Origin: Ophelia neglecta
Lineage: Eukaryota
Assembly (NCBI GenBank): GCA_965285935.1
Contig: OZ260662.1
Location: 50,654,001 to 50,718,000, forward strand
Direction of reading: 5' to 3'
Length of the DNA: 64,000 nucleotides
Part shown: one piece after another, positions 23,901 through 48,696 of the stretch
Layout: every line of letters starts with the position of its first letter
Numbering within the stretch: position 1 is the stretch's first letter
Program-made: the position numbers and the translations under genes
Notes under the pieces: generated by a model
What the model was told of the DNA's origin: nothing
The model's input: only the letters and a program-made list of their open reading frames with translations
Databases searched by the model: none

Positions 23901-24664
23901 ATACGGGCTTCTCAATCTGATCGGCACGTATAGCAATATGGCGCTATATCATCTATATGCCACCACAACAGTGAGGCTCGAAAACGCACAGTGTATTTAG
24001 ATTGGAGGCCCAATATTCTATTTTAAGTTAGCGCTTCGTAGCACAGCACTGTGTTGACTCATCAAGCAAGGTCACCGTATGTCCTTGAGATTAGCAGCTA
24101 GCCAATCGGTCGGATTGGTTCCCAGATCGAAGAATCAGCCGGGAACGGTCCGTCGTCTCATCTCATGCATGTAAACAGTTTTATGTTCCAGTAGTTAGGC
24201 AACAACATTATAATTGAACATAAACTATGGACAATTAGTGTGTCAGCCACCGTTGGGATCTAGTGGCTTAATTACTTAAGATCACCCTCATTAACGTTCG
24301 GTAAAAATGCGTATTAATTGTTATATCGATCGTTTCTTAGGTCTATTTATGTTTAATTAAACATATTCTATATAATAACCGTCGTCCGCGTTCAGACATT
24401 AAGCTCCTGGTATAATATTCAACTACCCCTGTTTTATTTAATTATGCTTAATTATGGTAATTGGGTTCTTGGTATTTCCACAATATTGGTCTAGTTTCCG
24501 TGCATGGTGGAGAACACTAGAACAACTGAACATGCTGTCGACGAGTTTCTGCTAAACAAGGCCTAGACATTAATGTCCCGTCTCGTGCATGGCCCGAGTC
24601 ATGAGACCTGTAGGTCTCCAAACCTAGTTCACAGGTGGCGTCTACTAGGCCAGCTGTTACCAGC

Positions 24665-24706
24665 ATGACCACTCATTGGATGGCCCGGGAAAATAGCTCG
24701 GTTAAA
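24665..24706 (+). CDS. BCOR: BCOR candidate first coding exon (MTTHWMARENSSVK); start uncertain
   Basis: First in-frame ATG after a stop at 24611. Phase-0 donors at 24701 or 24707 fit the acceptor at 24818. HWM loosely recalls the vertebrate BCOR N-terminal VHSWM. Confidence 0.4.
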
Positions 24707-24817
24707 GTAAATAGCAAGTTTGCGACTTCTCAGTGTTATAAAAACTTGCTATATATATACTATTATGTACTTCTCTTCCGGATAATACATGTATGTTTCG
24801 TCTCTTTCAGCCGACAG

Positions 24818-25822
24818 GTGATACCCTCATTGAAACTGACCGCGATTCGCAATAAGCTGAAGTTATCGAATGGAGCCAGCGTGAACAAGTCGCCACGGGC
24901 GGAAAAGAAACCTAAATCTTATCAACGACAGCGAAAGAACAGTGTAACCCCTAGTCCGACCAAAAAGTCACCAAAGGTCAAAACACTGAACAGAAAATTA
25001 ACAAGTCCTAACAATTTGGTAGGTAGTGCTGACTTACAGTTGAATCTCGGCGACTGTCTTACTAGGAAAAGCAATACAGTCGCAGAAGCGAAAGAACTAA
25101 CACCGGTAGATGAATCGACGAAGCCAACGTTGATTTCACTGCCTTTGGCGACACCTGGTGCCGAAAGTGAACAGTTGGAAAATGTTACCAGTGATAGCCG
25201 AGTGATTGATCATGACCCTTCTAACCAGACTTTAAATGTTGCCCTGAAAGTGTCTAAACGAGAGAAAAGGCGCCCTGTAAAATACAGTCCCGAACTATCA
25301 AGACCGACTTCAGGCAGGGGGAAAAATAAAACTCCCGATTCAGCCAAGGAAATAACTAATTCAAAAACAAGGCGGAGAGTGGACTTCAGTGATAGCCCAA
25401 CGAACGATGAACGAAAGAAAGACAAGGAAATAATAGACATCAGTAAAAATAGGCCGGTGGAGTCGGTACAAGACATTGAACCGCAAAAAAGTGATTGTGC
25501 GAATTCAGAAAACAGTGATCATAAAGAGGAAGCGAACGGGAGGGATTTCCAAGAAAAAGTTAAGCAAGTGAAAAACAATGTTAAGCCGTGTAATGAGGTT
25601 AGTAGCCAATCAGGTAGTTCCAGGTCTCGAGAAAGCTCAGGAGATACTGAGCTGACAAGAAATGGAAGTCCCGTGTTTCCTGAACGCACGAAAGGTACTT
25701 GTGTTTTGAAGAACTCTCATTCAGACATTGATTCGGACGTGTGCACGCCGCCCGGGTCTATGGTTGTCCCCTGTGATGATACCAATGTCAACGAGCACCG
25801 TCTGGCCGCTCGTATAGAAAAG
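24818..25822 (+). CDS. BCOR: BCOR coding exon (basic/acidic low-complexity N-terminal region); 5' edge 24811 or 24818
   Basis: Long open frame, tandem acceptors TTTCAG|CCGACAG|, and a phase-0 donor AAG|GTAGGC in frame with the next exon. Confidence 0.8.
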
Positions 25823-26282
25823 GTAGGCATTGTAGTGTCAATTTTAATCGTCATGCGAAAAAAGTTTGAATATTTGGAGAATAATACCCTTCTATTCGTG
25901 TTTCCGATATTATAAAACATTTGTCACATAGTTGAATTAATTGAATATGTTTAGTGCAAGGAATCAGGTCTAATCATACACTTCACGAGCTGTATTTCTT
26001 TTCCAAGGTTTGGCCATTAATAGCTTCTTCAATTGGCCATTTTATCAAATCTCAGAAATTGCCAGAATTATAGATAAAGCTGGTTTAAAGCGTATATTGG
26101 AAATTGGCTACAAAATCATGCAAAACAATTGGTTACTTTGTAGGAACAACCTTTGTCGTTTATTTCCTTGTTCTTAAAGTTTATGTATAAAAAATAGTGT
26201 CGAGTTGAACACCATTTATAGGCAATGCTTTAATATATTTTAGCAAATGCTATTATTGGTCCAATTTACTCGTTTGTTATAG

Positions 26283-26496: not shown

Positions 26497-29400
26497 ACGG
26501 CAATGACTGCGATGCCCCCTGTACTGACATCGTCCATACTGGAACGGACAGAATTAGTGTGTCATGAAAACGTGAGAGTTCAAAATATCCATCGAACTTT
26601 ATGGCCAAATGGACGCCGCAGCAAACCGAATAACAAGGTTGATAAGCAGCTGGACATTGCACAAGATGGTCCTCCTAAACAATTGCCCGGCCTGCTGCCT
26701 ATAACTGTGACAGGTCTTGCCGAACCCTCAATCAGAGGCCGGGATTCACCCAGAACTGACTATGACCAGGCCGAACGGCCAGTGTCTCCATTTGTGTGTT
26801 CTAAGCCAGTAAGTCCATCGCTGTCCAGCATGATGGTACCGGAAGTGAGGAGTGTCGAATCTCCAGCCAGCATTGCAGCAGCAGACGATGACTGTGCTCC
26901 TTTGGACCTCTCTAGAGGAAAAAAGAGAGACGTAGAATTTATTAATCTCGACGAACCTTTGGACCTTACAGTGAAAAAGAAGGCCCTTAACCCGCCTGCT
27001 GTCACAGCTCCATTCTATGAGGACCCAAATAAGGATGTCCCCATCCCATTTAGCGGGGCAAGTATCAGTTGTAATCGTGTTGCCCCTATGATACACAGAA
27101 CCCCTTCTCAGAGGAATATTTTCGAATCAAGGAATCAGACTCATATAAGAAAGGTATCTCCAGTCAGACCTCACATTGCAGGCAAGCCTGTGGTCCGTGA
27201 CACAAGTTATGGCGCTGGAGGTTATTCCCTAAACAAAACTACAAGCAATGCTCTAACATCCAAAGTGAAAAATGCTGCTACAGGAGTTAGTTCTTTTTGT
27301 GGTGTTGTGAATTCAAAAGGGATGGTAACACAGCCAAACTACGGTGATGTCAAACACAATAAAAATGTTCCAGACCGTCATTCAGTTCACACACATGAAG
27401 ACCGATTAAGAGCCAACTCGCCTTTTGCACAGGCACATGCAGCACTCCTATCGGGGGGCACGGTCATAAACACTTCAAAGGAAAGCGCAAGTCCTCGAGC
27501 GAGGTCCCCCGCCGGGAGATCTCTGTCCTCTGTTTCACTAGCAGCCCCCGTACTTAACGTTCCTACTTATCACCAAAGAACCAAAGAAGAGAGTCGGAAA
27601 GCAAAGAAAACATCCGAGCCGTTGCGAATTGCTATCCCCGGAGATTCAGTGTACGAGGCACCAAGAAACAGCAGTATACCAACGGCACAAGTAAAACCGA
27701 ACAATACGATGAACATCGTGGGTGAAGTAAGCATTAACCTGGACCGAGCTGCCCCTGCTACTGTGACCATTCACGGCGGCCTAGCGGGCAGCAAACCCCA
27801 ACACAAGAAAACCGCTCGGAAAAGTACTCGTGGAGAAATGAGCTCAAACTTTGATAAAAGACTGCTCCAACAAATGTTAGAGGGCACCTCGCCTCCAAAA
27901 CTGACTGTGGTCAGTCCGCCCAAATCCAGTACAAGTGACAGTGATATAGCCGCCCAGAATCCAATGCCATCTCCTCAGATGCCAGTTCTCAGTCCTCATT
28001 CCAGCCAGAACCAGTCTCCATCTGGATCTATGGCCAAAGATTACCCAGAACCGATTGAGAAGCACTCGCCAGCCTTGCCATCGACAATGGCTGCTCTCCG
28101 TAAAGTGTGTTCTGCGAGTTCTCGAGAAACGACACCAACCCTGGATAGTTCTGTGAATCTAACTCAAATCGAGAAAATAAAACATGAAAAGGCACGCGAG
28201 CTGTTGAATTCGAATTCAGCACTGGCGTCCCTGTTAGTGTCAGAAGCTATCAAACCAATCATTGGCGTGGAAATAAAGCAAGAACCATCAGATCATGCTG
28301 ACACCAGTGAAGCCATAATGCCTGATTTTTCGAGTGCCACATCTCCGAAGATCCGATCTCGGAAAACTCTAAAATCAGCCAAGGCAAAAACAGCGAAATG
28401 CCAAGTTGCAAAGGAGTTATTGGATAAATGTACATATCCCTCCGCTTTTGCACCCGTCTCAAAGTTTAGCAGAAAAGCGTTACAAAAGTCAAAGCGTTCT
28501 TTTTTCACGGGCTTTGCGTTTAACTTCAAGAAAGTGGAAGAAAAGAAAAGGAAATATGACGTTGGTAAATCTTCATACTACCAGTGTCATATACTTGGGA
28601 AACAACCAAAAGATGTAAATGAAATTAATAATACAAAAAACAGTTGCCCGGCGTCTCCTGTGAATCCTTACTCCAAAGTTTCTTACCTTGTGCCGGACAA
28701 AGGTGACGATTATGTCCCGTCCTTTGACCTTCCCTTCTCGGACTGGAGAGATCACCTGTTCAAGTATAAAAGAGAGAAATTAAAAATGCCAACTAAATTA
28801 GTGTACGTTCCTACAAAAGGAAACACGCCAAAAAAATTCGAAGATTTTACCACGCTTATTTCTGCAACACCTGCTCAGGGTTGCCATAGCAAGCGGAAAT
28901 TATCGACAGCACAGTTTGTTGAGAGTGAAAATGTCAATTCTCACGTGCTATCGGCCATTAAAAAGGAATGTCCCACTACAAGAAAGTTCGGCGTCATCGT
29001 TGAAAGACGGGCGTGGTTACTCGAAGAGCGAGGAGATTTAACTGCAAGTGACGAAAGGCTGGGCAAGAAATTGAAAAGAAAGTCGGAGTCTTCAACAGAT
29101 TCCACCCCTGTTAAAAGAAGTAAAATTACGGAGAAAAGTCCTGAGAAATCGGGAAGTCCAGATGGGGATAAACCTAGAATTTTCCTGAAGATTGCAAACG
29201 GGAAAATAATCAATTCATGCGTGCCAGAAAAAACGTGCAGTGAACCCAAAGAGAGCCATGATGCTGCAAGCGTCACATCGTCAGAATCTCCTACCAAAAA
29301 AGGAACGCGGGGACCTTACAAACAAAGATACAGCAGGGTTCGTCTGGAGGAGACTTATCCTCAACATATGGAAGAGTTAAAAACATTCCGCATGGGCGGA

Positions 29401-30384
29401 GATTCGGAAGAGGTACCGTCTGAGACGATGGTTGAAGTCTGTCCGCCTCCTCGAGAGATGCTTGTGACACTGGAGGATGCCACGAATGCTATAGAAGCAT
29501 TTAGACCCGACTTGATTCCCCATGTGCCAACTTCGTCCCAGTTGAACGATTCAACTGGCACAACGTTGCCTGGGTCTACTTCTTGTCCGTCTACACCCAA
29601 TACTATAATTTCAAGTAACAATATAATACCCCATGGTACGAAAGGCGAGTTGAGTTCCACGCCGAGGAAGCAGGACGATGATAACGCCCTTGCTAGTTTA
29701 GTCAGACGTGTCAAGTGTCAAATACTTGGCCAGGTGTCCGAGGAATTGATGAAAAAGAAGAAAACGCAAATTCGAAGTTGTCGTTCGCCAGTTGTAATTA
29801 ATAAGAATAAACTTTCTCCTTGCACCGTTGTTTTAACGAGAGATACACTACCTGAAGCGCCAAAGTCCCCAAAAACTTTGGAATCCAAGAAAGACGAAAG
29901 CACGGTCAGTATTGCTGGTCGTAAAAAGAAACCCCGCCCCTGCACCTCCTCCTCACCCAACGACTCACCGAGGAGGCTTGCCCGAGATCTTGCACAGAAG
30001 ATTAAGAAAGTCTCCCCAGCCCGAAAGGACAGGAAAAGTCTCTCTCCCCTCAAATCTTTGTCTGACCATTGTCAGAGTCCAAGGAATTCCCGAAGCAGCT
30101 CACCAGTTAAGTCGTCTGCTCTCTCTCCACGCAAACTTATCCGTTCTCCGAGGCGAGGTATGGACAAAGGGTTGTCTAAGTCTCCATCTCGTGGCGGTTC
30201 CCTTTGGAAATCGCCGAGAAAGAGAGCAGCTGAAGCAGCCAAAGCTAGAAAGAAGAAACGGCGTTCCATACTGGATGAGTTGGCAAATTCTGAGGGTTAT
30301 GTCGCTGACAAACAAATGAAGAAGGGGGGTGAGAACCTATATGCTGATCCTTCCAAGCTGGGGAGAGAAGAAAGAGCACTGCAG
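26497..30384 (+). CDS. BCOR: BCOR giant exon (3888 nt) with PLDLS and PLDLT motifs and the conserved LANSEGY...LYADPSKLGREERALQ block
   Basis: 1296 open codons between a TTGTAG acceptor and a CAG|GTTAGT donor. The terminal block matches vertebrate BCOR IANSAGYVGD...LYADSSQLSREQRALQ (recalled). Confidence 0.93.
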
Positions 30385-33341: not shown

Positions 33342-33856
33342 CTGTTGAAGGAAGACGCAAGCTAGAACGTATGTACCACAAAGATGACGCTTATGAGCAA
33401 GCGCTGAATAAAGATGAGCAACGACGAAGGCAAAGCCGGGTTAAGAAGCGTTCTAAACTACTAATGAACCAGTTGTCGGTAGATGGCGACTGTGGAGACT
33501 TTGAGAAGGCAGAGCCTTCTGGTCAAGTGGCAGACGACCACCACGAAACGACAGAAGACGACGACTTACCTGTGATAAAACCAGCTAAGAGAAAAAAAGC
33601 ACTTGGATTTATCTTTGATTGGCGATCAAAGTATCTCGGAAAATCGCCAAAAGGAAAATCTATTAAAAACAGCAAAGGCGTTAAAGCAAAGAATTCCTTA
33701 AGGGCTTCTTCGCCTCCCGAGAATAACACTCAAAATGATTCCTGCAATGTGTATCTTGGTGCTAAAGACAGAGCCTCGTCAGAGGAAGAATATGACTCCG
33801 ACTCAACTGTTTCATATGAAGATTCGTCTGCGGAGGAAGAGGAAGAAAAGAACACT
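33342..33856 (+). CDS. BCOR: BCOR coding exon (basic and acidic linker)
   Basis: CCTGTAG acceptor, ACT|GTAAGT donor, phase 1-0, open frame. Confidence 0.88.
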
Positions 33857-34193
33857 GTAAGTATATGATAAACCTCCCTACTGACCACACAGCCCCCATG
33901 GAAAAATATAGTTAGGAGAGTTACCTGAATATATTAGAGCACCTTACATGTGAATGTTCCAACAAAACAAGACAAATATACGATTTCACTGTATTTTTTA
34001 AGTTCAAGTTATTCTTTGTGCTCCTTGGAGTTAGGTGAACAGCATTTTATTTAAAGTACGGCTCCACTTACTTTTTCTAAATTTGCTTTATTTTCCCAAC
34101 TTTTCTTCACTCAGAGCTGGTCAACTTTCATTTTTTTACCTCTGTCATTTTTTTTTACCTCTATGTTATCGAGTATATTACATTACCGAATAG

Positions 34194-34331
34194 GCGAACG
34201 AGTGTTATGAAGAAACCTGCAACGGTGTTCCCGAAGACAAACTTGACATTCCATTAGAGGTGAAAAAGTTAAACATCTGTCACAACACGGGAGAGACCAT
34301 TCTTCACAAGGCAGCCAGACTGGGATATGAG
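34194..34331 (+). CDS. BCOR: BCOR exon, start of the ankyrin region (PLEVKKLNICHNTGETILHKAARLGYE)
   Basis: Matches BCOR [27 protein letters not shown] (recalled). AG/GT boundaries, phase 0-0. Confidence 0.93.
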
Positions 34332-34689
34332 GTGCGTCAGAAAAAACTATCTGTTATAACTCGTTGTTATCATCGTTACAGTCGAGTCAACGTTCGCTCT
34401 TTAAAAGCAGTAAACTACTTCAGTTATGAACTAAAGCCTGGGTTCAACTTTATTAGGTCCTTGTTAGTTTCTAGAGTAGAAACTGAGTTGTCACACAAAA
34501 AGAGTCATTTGAGGTCTGACAAAAGCTGAATTTTACGCACCCAAAGATTAGTCAGAATGAAATAAGTCGACAACGGAAGCAATCACAAATTCTACTTTCT
34601 AAGTTCGGTCTCATTTTCATGTCAGATCTATTCTACTCTGCTCAGTTCAATACAGACATATCATATTTCAATATCATTTACATCTATAG

Positions 34690-34859
34690 GACGTAGTTCT
34701 ATGGTGCTCCCAGCACAACTATGTGGAGGTGAAGGCGCGAGATAACGCTGGCTACTCGGCCCTGCACGAGAGTTGTGTGCCAGGTCACCTGAAGGTGGCG
34801 CGATATCTCCTTGAGTACGGAGCAGACGTCAATGTGGCGTCCCGTCTTGATGGCGTAAG
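34690..34859 (+). CDS. BCOR: BCOR ankyrin exon (DVVLWC...RDNAGYSALHESC...LLEYGADVN)
   Basis: Ankyrin consensus and the BCOR-type RDNAGY.ALHE motif. Phase 0-2. Absent from the ORF track and translated by hand. Confidence 0.95.
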
Positions 34860-35037
34860 GTGCGTGCATACTATAAACAACAATCTCACAATCCTGTAAA
34901 CACGGTGAATGTCTTCTACTCTTCTGCGATTGTTCGGTTTTAAGTAAGTTATTATCATGACAATAAACAAATTGAATCACATTTCTGTCACCCTTAACAT
35001 ATTGTTTGGTGATAACGTATATACCCATTTGATTCAG

Positions 35038-35183
35038 GCCTTTACACGATGCTGTAGAGAACGATCATACGGAGTTAGTACGTCTTTTGTTGTCCGCCGG
35101 AGCGGACCCCACTTTGTCGACCTATTCCGGCAAGTCTATCCTCAAACTAGCCCGTACCCGAGACCTGAGACAGTTCTTACAAG
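35038..35183 (+). CDS. BCOR: BCOR ankyrin exon ([32 protein letters not shown])
   Basis: Near-identical to vertebrate [32 protein letters not shown] (recalled). Phase 2-1. Confidence 0.96.
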
Positions 35184-35736
35184 GTAGGTATCGCGAACCT
35201 ATGAAAAGATAAGAGTATGTTTATCAAATATATTGTAAGCTTTCCAAACATGTTTACAAACAATTGCGATTTACAATAAACCTATTCGATAAAAAGTTTT
35301 TATAAGAAAATGGCACAAATGCAAATCAAAAGTTGGCTGAAGAAAATGCTTTTGTAATGCAACAAAGAGTCAATTATTCCTTGTTTCTTGCAAACAAATA
35401 AAATATAAATGCAAATATCACTGGTATGATACTTACTTGGATTTGTATGTTGAAACTGTTGACATGTGAAACAGAGAACATCGGGTATTAGGAGGTGGAA
35501 ATTCTCTTTCAAGCCTAACGGCCGAACTCCTTAATGGAGGAACATAAGTTTTCCTTTTTACACCGGCATTTCTGGTAAAGTTTCTTAAACCCTGTTTCTT
35601 TGCGGGTAATATTTAATGGTCGGAGAAAGACAGGAGATATTTCAATGCTCTCTGCAAAAACTGTCTTGCACCACGGAATACGTTTAGGATCGAAGAGCCA
35701 GTTTGGAGCACGAGGACTTGACTATATACGTATAAG

Positions 35737-35986: not shown

Positions 35987-36398
35987 ATAAGGGGCATGAT
36001 CGTCTGGGTGCAGAAATGGCGGCATATAAGCACTGTTGGCTGGCATGTTCATAAGTGTCTTTAATAACAGTACCGAAAAGACATAATACGTGAAAATGTA
36101 TACAGGAGGCGCAAATATATACAAAATGTACAAGAGGGTGCATTCTGTCATGTCAGACTAGCAGCTATCACCAGTGTGTTCTACTACACCTCACCTCTAT
36201 GGAGTTATACCGTACCTGGCCAGAATTCGAAATAGGAAAAGAAAAAAGTACATTGAAAAGGAAGAACTAGTAACTATATATATTCTAGTAGGTTTGTTTG
36301 TGTGTTAGGGGGTGTTTCAGACTGCATGGGTCACATTTGACTTCAGTAAAAACTATGTATATTGTGTTATAGGTAATTTTATTATCGTTTTGTTGCAG

Positions 36399-36657
36399 CT
36401 TATCTGATGGATTTAAATGGCCCAACAGAGATGGAGAGAGAAACGGTATGGGATTTCGAGTTCGTGAGTAAGGACCCTGAGGTGTCGGCTAGTCAGTGTG
36501 CTGAAAACGAGCCGACTAGTGATAAGTCAGAGTGTGGTTGTGATGTGCTCGCCGACCTCCCTAGTGACGATGAGGACGATGCCAATTTACTGGAGTTTGA
36601 GTTCAGTGAGGAGCTGCCAATTCAAAGCTACCTGCTTTGTGTGGATGAAAAGAAGGG
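36399..36657 (+). CDS. BCOR: BCOR exon, linker and start of PUFD (AYLMDLNG...WDF...EFEFSEELPIQSY)
   Basis: Matches BCOR YLNDLQG / WDF / FEFEFSE. TTGCAG acceptor, GG|GTAAC donor, phase 1-2. Confidence 0.92.
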
Positions 36658-37144
36658 GTAACAAACTTAACATGTATCCTTACTAACATCATAGTAACCA
36701 ACAAACTGTTACAAGTCCTATATTATGTAACTACAGTAATAGTTGCCCGTGGTTCTGGGCTACAACAATAAGCCATGTGAATTTAGATCTCTCTCCTTAC
36801 TTTAAATGAGCAATTCATCAGTCAAACTAGTGCAAATCTCACAAATATTACCTTCGGGATCTTTTTGATATTAATTTATTCCTTTTTTAAGCTGTGTTTG
36901 ATTCACTTGTATCATTAAAAAGTTGCAAATGTGCACACATTATCTGGGTCAATTTATTTATATAGTATACCTATGTTATATGTCCTCTTTATTGTTGTTT
37001 TCGATTTATGTACAACATGAGCTCGTCGGTGTGCCTGTAAGGTTTATAATGGAAGAAACAAGATATATGAAATCCCCAAGTCAGCGTGTGGTAACTATCG
37101 TATTATAGGGATCTGATTAATAATATAATATGTCGTCGTTTCAG

Positions 37145-37745
37145 GCCCGAGAATTACCTGGTTTTGTCGGATGTTATTTACCGACTTAAAGTGTCGGACT
37201 ATCGTCTGTGTAGCCTACACGGGTCTCTTCATATAGAGCATATTACTTGGAATGAGTTCTGTACTCAGCTGGAAATGTCACAATTAGCCATGGAGCCCCG
37301 AGAAGACATACGGCCTCTTGACAGTAATGAAATGATGGATTTTGTCAAATTGGACAGAAAACTGCAACAGCTATTGGGAATGGACGTTGACACGTGTAGT
37401 GTACAGGACATACACGAGGAGAACGGACACGACATCGCAGCAGACGACAAGACTTTGAATGTGAGCATTTGTAGCGAGGATCTCGAGGGCATCGGAGGAG
37501 ATTCCTGTTTGCCATCTCCGAATGACAGCATACCACCTCTGGGGTCGTACATATCTCGCACGGCGTCAGGGGACCAGTCTATTAAGCGGGCTGGCCCGCT
37601 CCCTGAACAACAGGAACTAGCCTATGACAGCGTCCCTCCAACTCCCGGTGTGGGGGTGATAAAAGAAGCTACCACCCCCGAAGAATGCTTCGCCCAATAT
37701 CACGCAACAAGAAGCGAAACATCTATGGATACCTGCATGGAGTAG
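37145..37745 (+). CDS. BCOR: BCOR last coding exon: PUFD domain plus acidic tail
   Basis: GPENYLVLSDV...LQQLLG matches PUFD GPRNWLLLSDV...LLG (recalled). TTTCAG acceptor and TAG stop at 37743-37745. Confidence 0.92.
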
Positions 37746-48382: not shown

Positions 48383-48696
48383 TCATAACCCAAGCGCGGC
48401 CGCGTGTTTCTTGGCTTTCATCCGCAAGTCTGCAATACTGGAGTTTTTGCTCACAGCCAGACTGCTTTGAGCTAGCGCCAGATTCATGGCAGCGTAGTGA
48501 GGGGTAGGGTAGAACAGCATGCTGGGAATGGATACCGCCGGATGTGGTGGAGCAACGGCTGCCAATGCGGCTGCGTGCTCGAAGGGCCCTAGGTGCTGCA
48601 TGTGAAGACGATCGAACGCCATACGCATCGAGGGCATATTGACGTAGGGCGCCACCCTACAGCCTTCCATGGTACCATTCGAATTCATCAGCAGAC
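48383..48696 (-). CDS. SHOX: Shox/Shox2 last coding exon with OAR domain
   Basis: GLLMNSNGTMEGCRVAPYVNM (Shox-specific CRVAPYVN) and the OAR KNSSIADLRMKAKKHAAALGL*. The TTGCAG acceptor is phase 1, matching the upstream exon. Confidence 0.96.

What the first reader, a model, noticed from the sequence alone, without database searches (positions are those of the whole stretch)
27805..27834. Histone H3K9-mimic peptide inside BCOR (KKTARKSTRG)
Seen: the giant exon encodes KKTARKSTRG, 8/10 identical to histone H3 residues 4-13 (KQTARKSTGG), including K9, S10 and T11, in a disordered region. Known: ARK(S/T) mimics in G9a/GLP, WIZ and LIG1 are methylated by G9a/GLP and read by HP1/CDYL chromodomains or the UHRF1 TTD, and CtBP complexes contain G9a/GLP. 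Inference: this BCOR has two CtBP motifs ~300 aa upstream, so it could be methylated and link PRC1.1 to H3K9/HP1 readers through a methyl/phospho switch. I do not recall this motif in vertebrate BCOR.
Basis: partly seen in the sequence, partly recalled or inferred. Interest (0 to 1): 0.8.

Follow-up and report, generated by a model that had tools for sequence, protein, structure and literature searches.

The report
Conserved H3K9-like motif in BCOR
The histone-H3-like peptide is real, lies in the BCOR (Polycomb PRC1.1 corepressor) gene of a lophotrochozoan invertebrate, and its core ARKST is kept unchanged in three very distant relatives, so it is probably a working docking motif that imitates the histone tail, although methylation and reader binding are untested.

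Summary
Window 27805-27834 (+) encodes KKTARKSTRG, 8/10 identical to this genome's own H3 residues 4-13.

- **Gene:** the peptide lies in a 3.9-kb exon (26497-30384) of the genome's only BCOR-family gene. Ankyrin and PUFD exons lie downstream, and two PxDLS CtBP-type motifs lie about 290 residues upstream.
- **Conservation test passes in a subset.** Three other BCOR orthologues are only 23-24% identical to this exon. All three keep ARKST, followed by KRLLQQxLE and SPPKL, at the collinear place. All five ARKST codons differ synonymously.
- **A second site exists.** Two further orthologues carry an even better H3 copy (ARKSTGG) at a different place. The window's equivalent there has decayed to ARDLA.
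- **Limits.** The motif is absent from about 40 other orthologues: vertebrates, insects, mites, a cnidarian, Haliotis, Liolophura and Ridgeia. The KKT flank is not conserved. ARKS as a 4-mer is not enriched in the family.

My reading is a selected short linear motif, most economically an H3K9-tail mimic. Confidence that it is functional is about 0.85. Confidence that it works by lysine methylation and a methyl-lysine reader is about 0.4. No paper in the searched library links BCOR to histone mimicry. It would be a new candidate member of a known kind. Interest is moderate.

The parts
26497..30384 (+). Giant exon of the single BCOR-family gene (1296 codons). It has no known domain and carries the conserved short islands listed below.
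   Evidence: Open frame. Acceptor and donor read. Orthologous giant exons all end at ...REERALQ|GT.
26899..26970 (+). Two CtBP-type PxDLS motifs: PLDLS at 26899-26913 and PLDLT at 26956-26970.
   Evidence: A double PxDLS recurs in P0001, P0005, P0011, P0013, P0016, P0027, P0028, Haliotis and Liolophura.
27805..27834 (+). The reported peptide KKTARKSTRG. The invariant core ARKST is 27814-27828, and the H3K9-equivalent lysine codon AAA is 27820-27822 (ORF residue 440).
27856..27921 (+). Companion part of the same conserved module: KRLLQQMLE, then SPPKLTVVSPP.
   Evidence: KRLLQQ is the second-longest invariant run in the 4-way alignment. See also alignment A1 and the profile search.
27979..27999 (+). 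MPVLSPH, the distal end of the island. Together with SPPxLxV it is conserved more widely than ARKST.
   Evidence: present in Q, P0011, P0028, P0002, Ridgeia P0005/P0018 and P0016.
29971..30027 (+). Decayed counterpart of 'site B' (RRLARDLAQKIKKVSPARK). In orthologues P0001 and P0014 this position reads RQVARKSTGG[VI][KR]K.
   Evidence: BLASTP alignment of the window exon with P0014. Context shown.
30250..30384 (+). Best-conserved island of the exon (KKRRSxLDELANSxGYVA...DPSxLxREERALQ). It was used to anchor orthology.
   Evidence: A vertebrate equivalent NSxGY occurs in Sorex and Spea BCOR.
34242..35197 (+). Three ankyrin-repeat exons (about 34242-34331, 34690-34869 and 35033-35197).
   Evidence: Pfam Ank 2e-7. 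tblastn with Ridgeia, Haliotis and Sorex BCOR.
36386..37391 (+). Linker exon (36386-36658) and PUFD exon (about 37146-37391), the PCGF1-binding domain that defines BCOR/BCORL1.
   Evidence: PF16553 at 36.1 bits, above the cut-off. tblastn. Single copy in the genome.

Best explanation
KKTARKSTRG is the front end of a conserved, roughly 35-65-residue short-linear-motif module in the non-globular giant exon of this lophotrochozoan's single BCOR (PRC1.1 corepressor) gene. The module is ARKST, then 3-8 variable residues, then [DNS]KRLLQQxLE, SPPKLxV and MPxLSPH. The ARKST core is under purifying selection and copies the histone H3 tail around K9.

The most economical mechanism is inferred, not shown. 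The lysine (ORF residue 440) is methylated by an H3K9-type methyltransferase. A G9a/GLP-type enzyme could be brought in through CtBP bound to the upstream PxDLS pair. The methylated ARK(me)ST is then read by a protein that normally reads methylated ARKS on histones: an HP1-type chromodomain, or alternatively Pc/CBX, CDYL, MPP8, the EHMT ankyrin repeats or EED. Phosphorylation of the invariant Ser/Thr would release it.

Shown here: gene identity, motif presence, protein-level conservation, a second independent ARKSTGG site in other orthologues, and presence of candidate writers and readers in the genome. Inferred: methylation, reader identity and the switch.
For: 1. ARKST is invariant and collinear in four orthologues: the window, P0011, P0027 and P0028. 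These are 23-24% identical overall. ARKST is the third-longest invariant run of the whole exon, after LGREERAL and KRLLQQ.
2. All five codons differ synonymously between the window (GCT CGG AAA AGT ACT) and P0028/P0027. The conservation is therefore at protein level.
3. The window and the P0011/27/28 clade are separated by about 2.7 substitutions per site on a star-like tree.
4. A second, non-collinear island in P0001 and P0014 reads RQVARKSTGG[VI][KR]K. These two proteins are themselves barely alignable. Across the 69 retrieved family sequences, ARKSTGG is seen 2 times against 6e-4 expected and ARKST 5 times against 0.26 expected. Its Ser codon is TCA rather than AGY, which argues for a separate origin.
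5. The invariant positions A-R-K-S-T are those used by the writer and reader. TARKSTG is the minimal G9a substrate with Arg essential (PMC8541646). ARKS/T peptides of G9a, GLP and mAM are methylated by G9a and then bind HP1 (PMC2175347).
6. The genome has four HP1-type genes and SUV39H-like and EHMT-like Pre-SET exons.
7. BCORL1's PXDLS is a documented CtBP site (review PMC13703134). WIZ links G9a/GLP to CtBP (reference cited in PMC8541646).
Against: - The motif is missing from most BCOR orthologues sampled without regard to it: 14 vertebrates, about 20 insects, mites, Hydractinia, Haliotis, Liolophura, Ridgeia, P0013, P0016, P0033 and P0040.
- In P0002 the aligned segment has decayed to VHKKT.
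- The residues matching H3 K4-T6 are not conserved (KKT versus VMV, VMC or LMC). The 8/10 likeness of the window peptide is therefore partly luck.
- The ARKS 4-mer is not enriched in the family (5 observed, 4.1 expected).
- ARKST is retained and lost together with KRLLQQxLE. It may be one half of a docking site for an unknown partner rather than a histone mimic.
- In ADNP, an ARKS motif matters for HP1-dependent localisation, yet no methylation was detected and the methylated peptide did not bind HP1 (PMC3022755).
- There is no RNA, proteomic or modification data for this organism. The species of all ARKST-bearing orthologues are unknown.
Confidence: 0.4

Rival explanations
1. It is a conserved docking or regulatory motif that is not a methyl-lysine histone mimic. 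ARKST plus the KRLLQQxLE segment would form one bipartite binding site for an unknown partner. Alternatively, R-K-S-T is a basophilic-kinase (Aurora or PKA type) phospho-site, possibly with 14-3-3 binding. The likeness to H3 would then reflect shared use of the same kinase or binder, or coincidence.
For: - ARKST and KRLLQQ are kept together in four orthologues and lost together in P0002, Ridgeia and P0016, while SPPxLxV...MPxLSPH stays.
- The upstream H3-like flank is not conserved.
- The ADNP precedent of a functional ARKS without detectable methylation.
- RKS/RKST fits basophilic kinase consensus sites (my own knowledge).
Against: - A kinase site or nuclear localisation signal does not need the invariant Ala and Lys.
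- A second, independent island in other orthologues extends the identity to H3 (ARKSTGG, then [VI][KR]K as in H3 33-37) without any KRLLQQ-type companion.
- The protein has many other basic clusters that could serve as import signals.
Confidence: 0.35
2. It is an H3K27-type mimic aimed at PRC2. The ARKS lysine would be methylated by EZH2/E(z) and bound by the EED aromatic cage, as for JARID2 K116 and PALI1. That would couple PRC1.1 to allosteric activation of PRC2.
For: - ARKS is shared by H3K9 and H3K27.
- Site B of P0001 reads ARKS followed directly by TGGVKK. This equals H3 25-28 joined to H3 32-37.
- BCOR is a Polycomb subunit.
- That EED binds trimethylated ARKS-type marks, and the JARID2 and PALI1 mimics, are from my own knowledge and were not checked here.
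Against: - The residue after Ser is Thr in all six sequences, as at H3K9 (ST) and not H3K27 (SA).
- The window has no GGVKK continuation.
- Nothing was tested.
Confidence: 0.12
3. It is a chance resemblance in a Lys/Arg/Ser/Thr-rich disordered exon with no function of its own.
For: - The exon is rich in S (12.6%), K (9.8%), R (6.6%) and T (6.2%).
- The ARKS 4-mer is at expectation in the family.
- Most orthologues lack the motif.
Against: - Five invariant residues with fully divergent codons across about 2.7 substitutions per site.
- Fixed position 9-14 residues before KRLLQQ in four orthologues.
- A second conserved ARKSTGG island elsewhere.
- Only 1 of 300 shuffles reaches 8/10.
Confidence: 0.08

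Closest known systems
G9a/GLP automethylation site and mAM/ATF7IP ARKT motifs (H3K9 mimics read by HP1)
   Same: An A-R-K-[ST] core in a non-globular part of a chromatin repressor. ARKS/T peptides are efficient G9a substrates, and the methylated motif anchors HP1 (PMC2175347). The window's TARKSTR matches 6 of 7 positions of the minimal G9a substrate TARKSTG (PMC8541646).
   Different: The carrier here is a PRC1.1 subunit, not an H3K9 methyltransferase or its cofactor. Methylation and HP1 binding are untested. The motif is confined to some invertebrate lineages.
ADNP ARKS plus PGVLL module (HP1-dependent heterochromatin targeting)
   Same: An ARKS motif lies a few tens of residues before a short hydrophobic pentamer, and both are conserved. 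In the window, ARKST lies 22-27 residues before a conserved P-K-L-x-V segment.
   Different: ADNP's motifs lie in a homeodomain, and PGVLL is a true PxVxL. The window has PxLxV, so the chromoshadow consensus is not met. For ADNP, no methylation and no binding of the methylated peptide were found.
WIZ and the CtBP corepressor complex
   Same: A PxDLS-type CtBP-binding motif sits in the same polypeptide as an H3K9-like site. WIZ links G9a/GLP to CtBP (reference cited in PMC8541646).
   Different: BCOR has no zinc fingers and is not known to bind G9a/GLP. The link is by analogy only.
JARID2 K116 and PALI1 (H3K27 mimics in PRC2 accessory subunits)
   Same: A Polycomb accessory protein carries a histone-tail-like R-K site in a disordered region (my own knowledge).
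   Different: Those are PRC2 partners, methylated by PRC2 and read by EED. Here the carrier is PRC1.1, and the +2 residue is K9-like (Thr).
Vertebrate BCOR/BCORL1
   Same: Ankyrin repeats, PUFD, a PxDLS motif, a giant central exon and the terminal NSxGY...RALQ island.
   Different: The vertebrate proteins sampled have no ARK[ST] and no site-A module. The window lacks the vertebrate BCL6-binding domain.

Membership tests
BCOR/BCORL1 (PRC1.1 corepressor) | C-terminal PUFD (PCGF1-binding) domain | tested here: met
   PF16553 scores 36.1 bits against a cut-off of 29.5 on exon 37164-37742. There is one locus in the genome.
BCOR/BCORL1 (PRC1.1 corepressor) | Three ankyrin repeats upstream of the PUFD | tested here: met
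   Pfam Ank 2e-7. The exons are 58-60% identical to Ridgeia and Haliotis BCOR.
BCOR/BCORL1 (PRC1.1 corepressor) | PxDLS CtBP-binding motif (documented for BCORL1) | tested here: met
   The sequences PLDLS and PLDLT are present. CtBP binding itself was not tested. Review PMC13703134.
BCOR/BCORL1 (PRC1.1 corepressor) | BCL6-binding domain (PF15808) | tested here: not met
   No Pfam hit on the giant exon. In one search, PF15808 is listed only for vertebrate proteins, so this is a vertebrate addition rather than a family-wide feature.
H3K9-type histone mimic (G9a/GLP substrate, HP1 ligand) | A-R-K-[S/T] core matching H3 7-10 | tested here: met
   ARKST at 27814-27828. The genome's own H3 was read.
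H3K9-type histone mimic (G9a/GLP substrate, HP1 ligand) | Evolutionary constraint on the core | tested here: met
   Invariant in 4 orthologues at 23-24% overall identity, with synonymous codon turnover. It is absent from most other orthologues.
H3K9-type histone mimic (G9a/GLP substrate, HP1 ligand) | Accessible, non-globular context | tested here: inconclusive
   No Pfam or PDB relative and a polar composition. The structure-prediction job failed or was unavailable.
H3K9-type histone mimic (G9a/GLP substrate, HP1 ligand) | Lysine methylated by an H3K9 methyltransferase | not testable with these tools
   This needs an enzyme assay or mass spectrometry. Candidate SUV39H-like and EHMT-like genes exist.
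H3K9-type histone mimic (G9a/GLP substrate, HP1 ligand) | Methyl-dependent binding by a chromodomain or other reader | not testable with these tools
   An intron splits the HP1 chromodomains of this genome after ...LLKWKGYPE.
HP1 chromoshadow ligand (PxVxL pentamer) | P-x-V-x-[LMV] with a central Val | tested here: not met
   The conserved segment reads P-K-L-[TAS]-V (PxLxV) in the window, P0011, P0027 and P0028. It is only a loose resemblance.
H3K27-type mimic (PRC2 substrate, EED ligand) | A-R-K-S core with methylation by PRC2 and EED binding | not testable with these tools
   The core is present. The +2 residue is Thr (K9-like), not Ala.

The most novel reading that the evidence does not exclude
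In a subset of lophotrochozoans, BCOR carries a selected histone-H3-tail mimic whose position has turned over during evolution. Site A (ARKST-KRLLQQ) occurs in the window's lineage and one other clade. Site B (ARKSTGG[VI][KR]K) occurs in others, and the window keeps only a decayed site B. The mimic would be methylated by an H3K9 methyltransferase recruited through CtBP, or by PRC2. It would be read by HP1, CBX or EED, giving a direct physical bridge between non-canonical PRC1.1 and the H3K9me/HP1 or PRC2 machinery. No such bridge is described for BCOR in the papers searched.
Probability: 0.3. Interest if true: 0.75.

Novelty: new member of a known kind. Interest (0 to 1): 0.5.

Why it matters
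Histone-tail mimicry is an established way for chromatin regulators and viruses to borrow histone writers and readers. I found no report of it for BCOR: five papers mention both BCOR and histone mimicry, all only in passing, and the 2026 BCOR review mentions no G9a, HP1, EHMT or lysine methylation.

A selected ARKST site in BCOR would point to cross-talk between variant Polycomb repression and H3K9/HP1 or PRC2 pathways in some invertebrates. It would also give a clean evolutionary example of a short linear motif being kept, lost and re-created at another place in the same disordered protein.

The hypothesis can be tested with peptides. Its reach is limited because vertebrate, insect and many other BCOR proteins lack the motif.

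Tried and rejected
- **First word-index search.** The search with the whole exon gave only one hit, because low-complexity words dominated. A search restricted to the C-terminal island added two more.
- **PDB searches.** The site-A module and the PRIFLKIANGKIIN segment (a possible AF9-binding motif) found nothing, so no AF9-motif claim is made.
- **Organism.** Expression could not be checked and read laying was not used. Accession numbers of the orthologue contigs occur in no paper, so their species stay unknown.
- **Trees.** The first maximum-likelihood tree did not finish in time. The FastTree version is star-like with long-branch warnings. I use it only for the P0011/27/28 clade and for branch lengths.
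- **Complex prediction not used.** The single-exon chromodomains found are transposon or CHD types. Methyl-lysine cannot be modelled.
- **Rejected ideas:** DNA-level conservation (codons differ); a repeated module elsewhere in the genome (unique); a true PxVxL chromoshadow motif (central Val missing).
- **My recollection of an ARKT in mammalian BCOR** was not borne out. Sorex BCOR has no ARK.
- **Spliced model.** All exons were searched separately by reference.
Full report
**Observation.** Window 27805-27834 (+) reads AAG AAA ACC GCT CGG AAA AGT ACT CGT GGA, which is KKTARKSTRG. The other strand gives nothing of note. I then checked that against the genome's own H3 gene, whose N-terminus is ARTKQTARKSTGGKAPRKQ... 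(L019).

In 300 composition-preserving shuffles of the exon, one reached 8/10 against the first 40 H3 residues. The expected count of TARKST in the exon is 3e-4. That is unusual for one exon but not for a scan of many windows. Chance can only be excluded by conservation.

**The gene.** The peptide is residues 435-444 of a 1313-codon open frame.
- The frame is an exon. It has a pyrimidine tract and TAG acceptor just before 26497 and a CAG|GTTAGT donor at 30384/30385. Orthologous exons end at the same ...REERALQ|GT.
- The exon has no Pfam domain.
- Downstream exons carry ankyrin repeats (Pfam Ank 2e-7) and a PUFD domain (PF16553, 36.1 bits against a cut-off of 29.5). tblastn with annelid, mollusc and mammal BCOR places them at about 34242-35197 and 36386-37391.
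- The genome (762 Mb) has a single PUFD locus.

So this is the one BCOR/BCORL1-type gene of the animal. PLDLS and PLDLT lie 286-305 residues before the motif. A double PxDLS is common in the invertebrate orthologues. BCORL1's PXDLS is a documented CtBP site (PMC13703134).

All exons were searched separately by reference. I built no joined spliced model.

**Relatives.**
- The giant exon evolves very fast. The word-index search found one relative (P0001). The exhaustive search found 16, mostly through the terminal island. A search restricted to that island found P0027 and P0028.
- Names exist for few of them: a Ridgeia piscesae (annelid) protein and a mite 'BCL-6 corepressor'.
- A search that ignores the motif, using the ankyrin-PUFD part of the Ridgeia protein, brought about 40 named BCOR proteins. 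These came from vertebrates, Lepidoptera, Hymenoptera, a springtail, mites, Hydractinia, Haliotis and Liolophura.
- The species of the window is coded, and no RNA run exists. Other agents' notes call it a lophotrochozoan or annelid (unchecked). My best ankyrin matches, to Ridgeia and Haliotis, are consistent with that but do not settle it.

**Site A is a conserved island.** Three orthologues carry ARKST at the collinear place, between the PxDLS pair and the FFxxxAF and terminal islands: P0011, P0027 and P0028. In each, the same companion follows: 3 residues (8 in the window), then [DNS]KRLLQQxLE, then SP[PS]KLxV, then usually MPxLSPH.
- In a four-way alignment, the window is 23-24% identical to the three others, which are 37-43% identical among themselves.
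- Only 140 columns are invariant. ARKST is the third-longest invariant run of the whole exon, after LGREERAL and KRLLQQ.
- The codons differ at every synonymous position: GCT CGG AAA AGT ACT against GCC AGG AAG AGC ACC and GCG AGG AAG AGC ACG. The constraint therefore acts on the protein.
- On a poorly resolved tree, the three form a clade with full support. The window sits apart, about 2.7 substitutions per site away.
- The module is unique in the genome.

**Limits of that conservation.**
- Only A-R-K-S-T is invariant. The residues matching H3 K4-Q5-T6 are KKT in the window but VMV, VMC or LMC in the others.
- The distal part of the island (SPPxLxV...MPxLSPH) is also present in P0002, Ridgeia and P0016. 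These lack both ARKST and KRLLQQ. In P0002 the aligned segment reads VHKKT...DKRTTH. ARKST and KRLLQQ are thus kept or lost together.
- None of the named orthologues has ARK[ST], including 14 vertebrate BCOR/BCOR-like proteins.
- Over 69 family sequences, ARKS occurs 5 times against 4.1 expected. The 4-mer is not enriched. All five are ARKST (0.26 expected) and fall into two homologous groups.

**Site B.** P0001 and P0014 carry RQVARKSTGG[VI][KR]K at a different place, between the WRDxLxxYK island and the terminal island.
- These two proteins are themselves hardly alignable outside the islands.
- ARKSTGG is expected 6e-4 times in the whole set and is seen twice.
- In P0001 the sequence continues TGGVKK. 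This is H3 32-37, so the site looks like a K9/K27 hybrid.
- Its serine codon is TCA, not AGY as in site A. This favours an independent origin.
- The window's equivalent position reads RRLARDLAQKIKKVSPARK (29971-30027), aligned by BLASTP with P0014's KIRQVARKSTGGIRKFSPATK. It is a decayed site B without the lysine. P0011 has AKKST there.

Two islands with the same H3 core in different lineages of one protein family are hard to explain without selection for that core.

**Mechanism.** The invariant positions are those that matter for H3K9 enzymes and readers.
- TARKSTG is the minimal G9a substrate, with the Arg essential and a small hydrophobic residue before it (PMC8541646).
- ARKS/T peptides from G9a, GLP and mAM are methylated by G9a as well as H3 is. 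The methylated G9a motif binds HP1 (PMC2175347).
- A kinase site or import signal would not need the Ala and Lys.
- The genome encodes four HP1-type genes (chromoshadow hits, each with an upstream chromodomain exon), an SUV39H-like Pre-SET exon and an EHMT2-like Pre-SET exon. The EHMT2-like match is weak, E = 2e-4.
- A CtBP route to G9a/GLP is plausible by analogy with WIZ (reference cited in PMC8541646).

I therefore favour an H3K9-tail mimic, but only at about 0.4. The co-variation with KRLLQQ and the ADNP precedent keep a non-mimic docking or phospho-motif nearly as likely. In ADNP, ARKS is needed for HP1-dependent localisation, yet no methylation was detected and the methylated peptide did not bind (PMC3022755). 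A PRC2/EED-directed (H3K27-type) reading is a minor variant. Pure chance is now unlikely.

**Not done.** Structure prediction failed or was unavailable. No complex prediction was sent. The other single-exon chromodomains are transposon or CHD types. Expression could not be checked.

**Novelty and score.** No paper in the searched library connects BCOR with histone mimicry, G9a, HP1 or lysine methylation. The kind of element, an ARK(S/T) histone mimic in a chromatin regulator, is well known. BCOR would be a new, still unproven carrier, restricted to some invertebrates. Interest is 0.5.

Noticed in passing
window 29971-30027 (+); P0001 residues ~1046-1062; P0014 residues ~290-306: A second H3-like island ('site B', RQVARKSTGG[VI][KR]K) occurs in two other BCOR orthologues. 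In P0001 it continues as in H3 32-37 (TGGVKK). The window's homologous stretch has lost the lysine (ARDLA).
   Followed up: yes
window 27892-27921 and 27979-27999 (+): SPPKLTVVSPP and MPVLSPH are conserved in more orthologues than ARKST itself, including Ridgeia, P0002 and P0016. P-K-L-x-V loosely resembles an HP1 chromoshadow PxVxL pentamer with Leu in place of the central Val. Its function is unknown.
   Followed up: partly
window 27151-27192, 28501-28527, 28744-28818 (+): Further short conserved islands of the giant exon are shared with distant orthologues: KVSPVRPHIxGxPV, FFxxFAFxF and WRDxLFxYK...VYVPTK. None has a known function.
   Followed up: partly
window 29173-29214 (+): PRIFLKIANGKIIN looks like the alternating-hydrophobic type of motif that binds the AF9/MLLT3 AHD domain in vertebrate BCOR (my recollection). 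A PDB sequence search found nothing, and it is not among the invariant runs.
   Followed up: partly
window 48386-48688 (-): The last exon of a paired-like homeobox gene on the opposite strand. It has an OAR motif (PF03826, 35.6 bits, E = 7e-9) near the end of a 101-residue open frame.
   Followed up: partly
window 24635-25915 (+) and 33371-33868 (+): Two more long open frames on the BCOR strand with no Pfam family above its cut-off. One is a 426-residue K/S/P-rich frame 0.6 kb upstream of the giant exon. The other is a 165-residue acidic, Ser-rich frame between the giant exon and the ankyrin exons. They may be further BCOR exons. This was not established.
   Followed up: no
G000 C9:11.23-11.41 Mb and 13.51-13.66 Mb; C2:7.25-7.32 Mb; C1:120.9-124.7 Mb: Large tandem arrays of histone gene repeat units, with H3 copies every 6.6-7.8 kb.
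   Followed up: no
G000 C1:144.27 Mb, 144.61 Mb, 147.76 Mb, 46.02 Mb: Four HP1-type genes. All have the chromodomain split by an intron at the same place, after ...LLKWKGYPE.
   Followed up: partly
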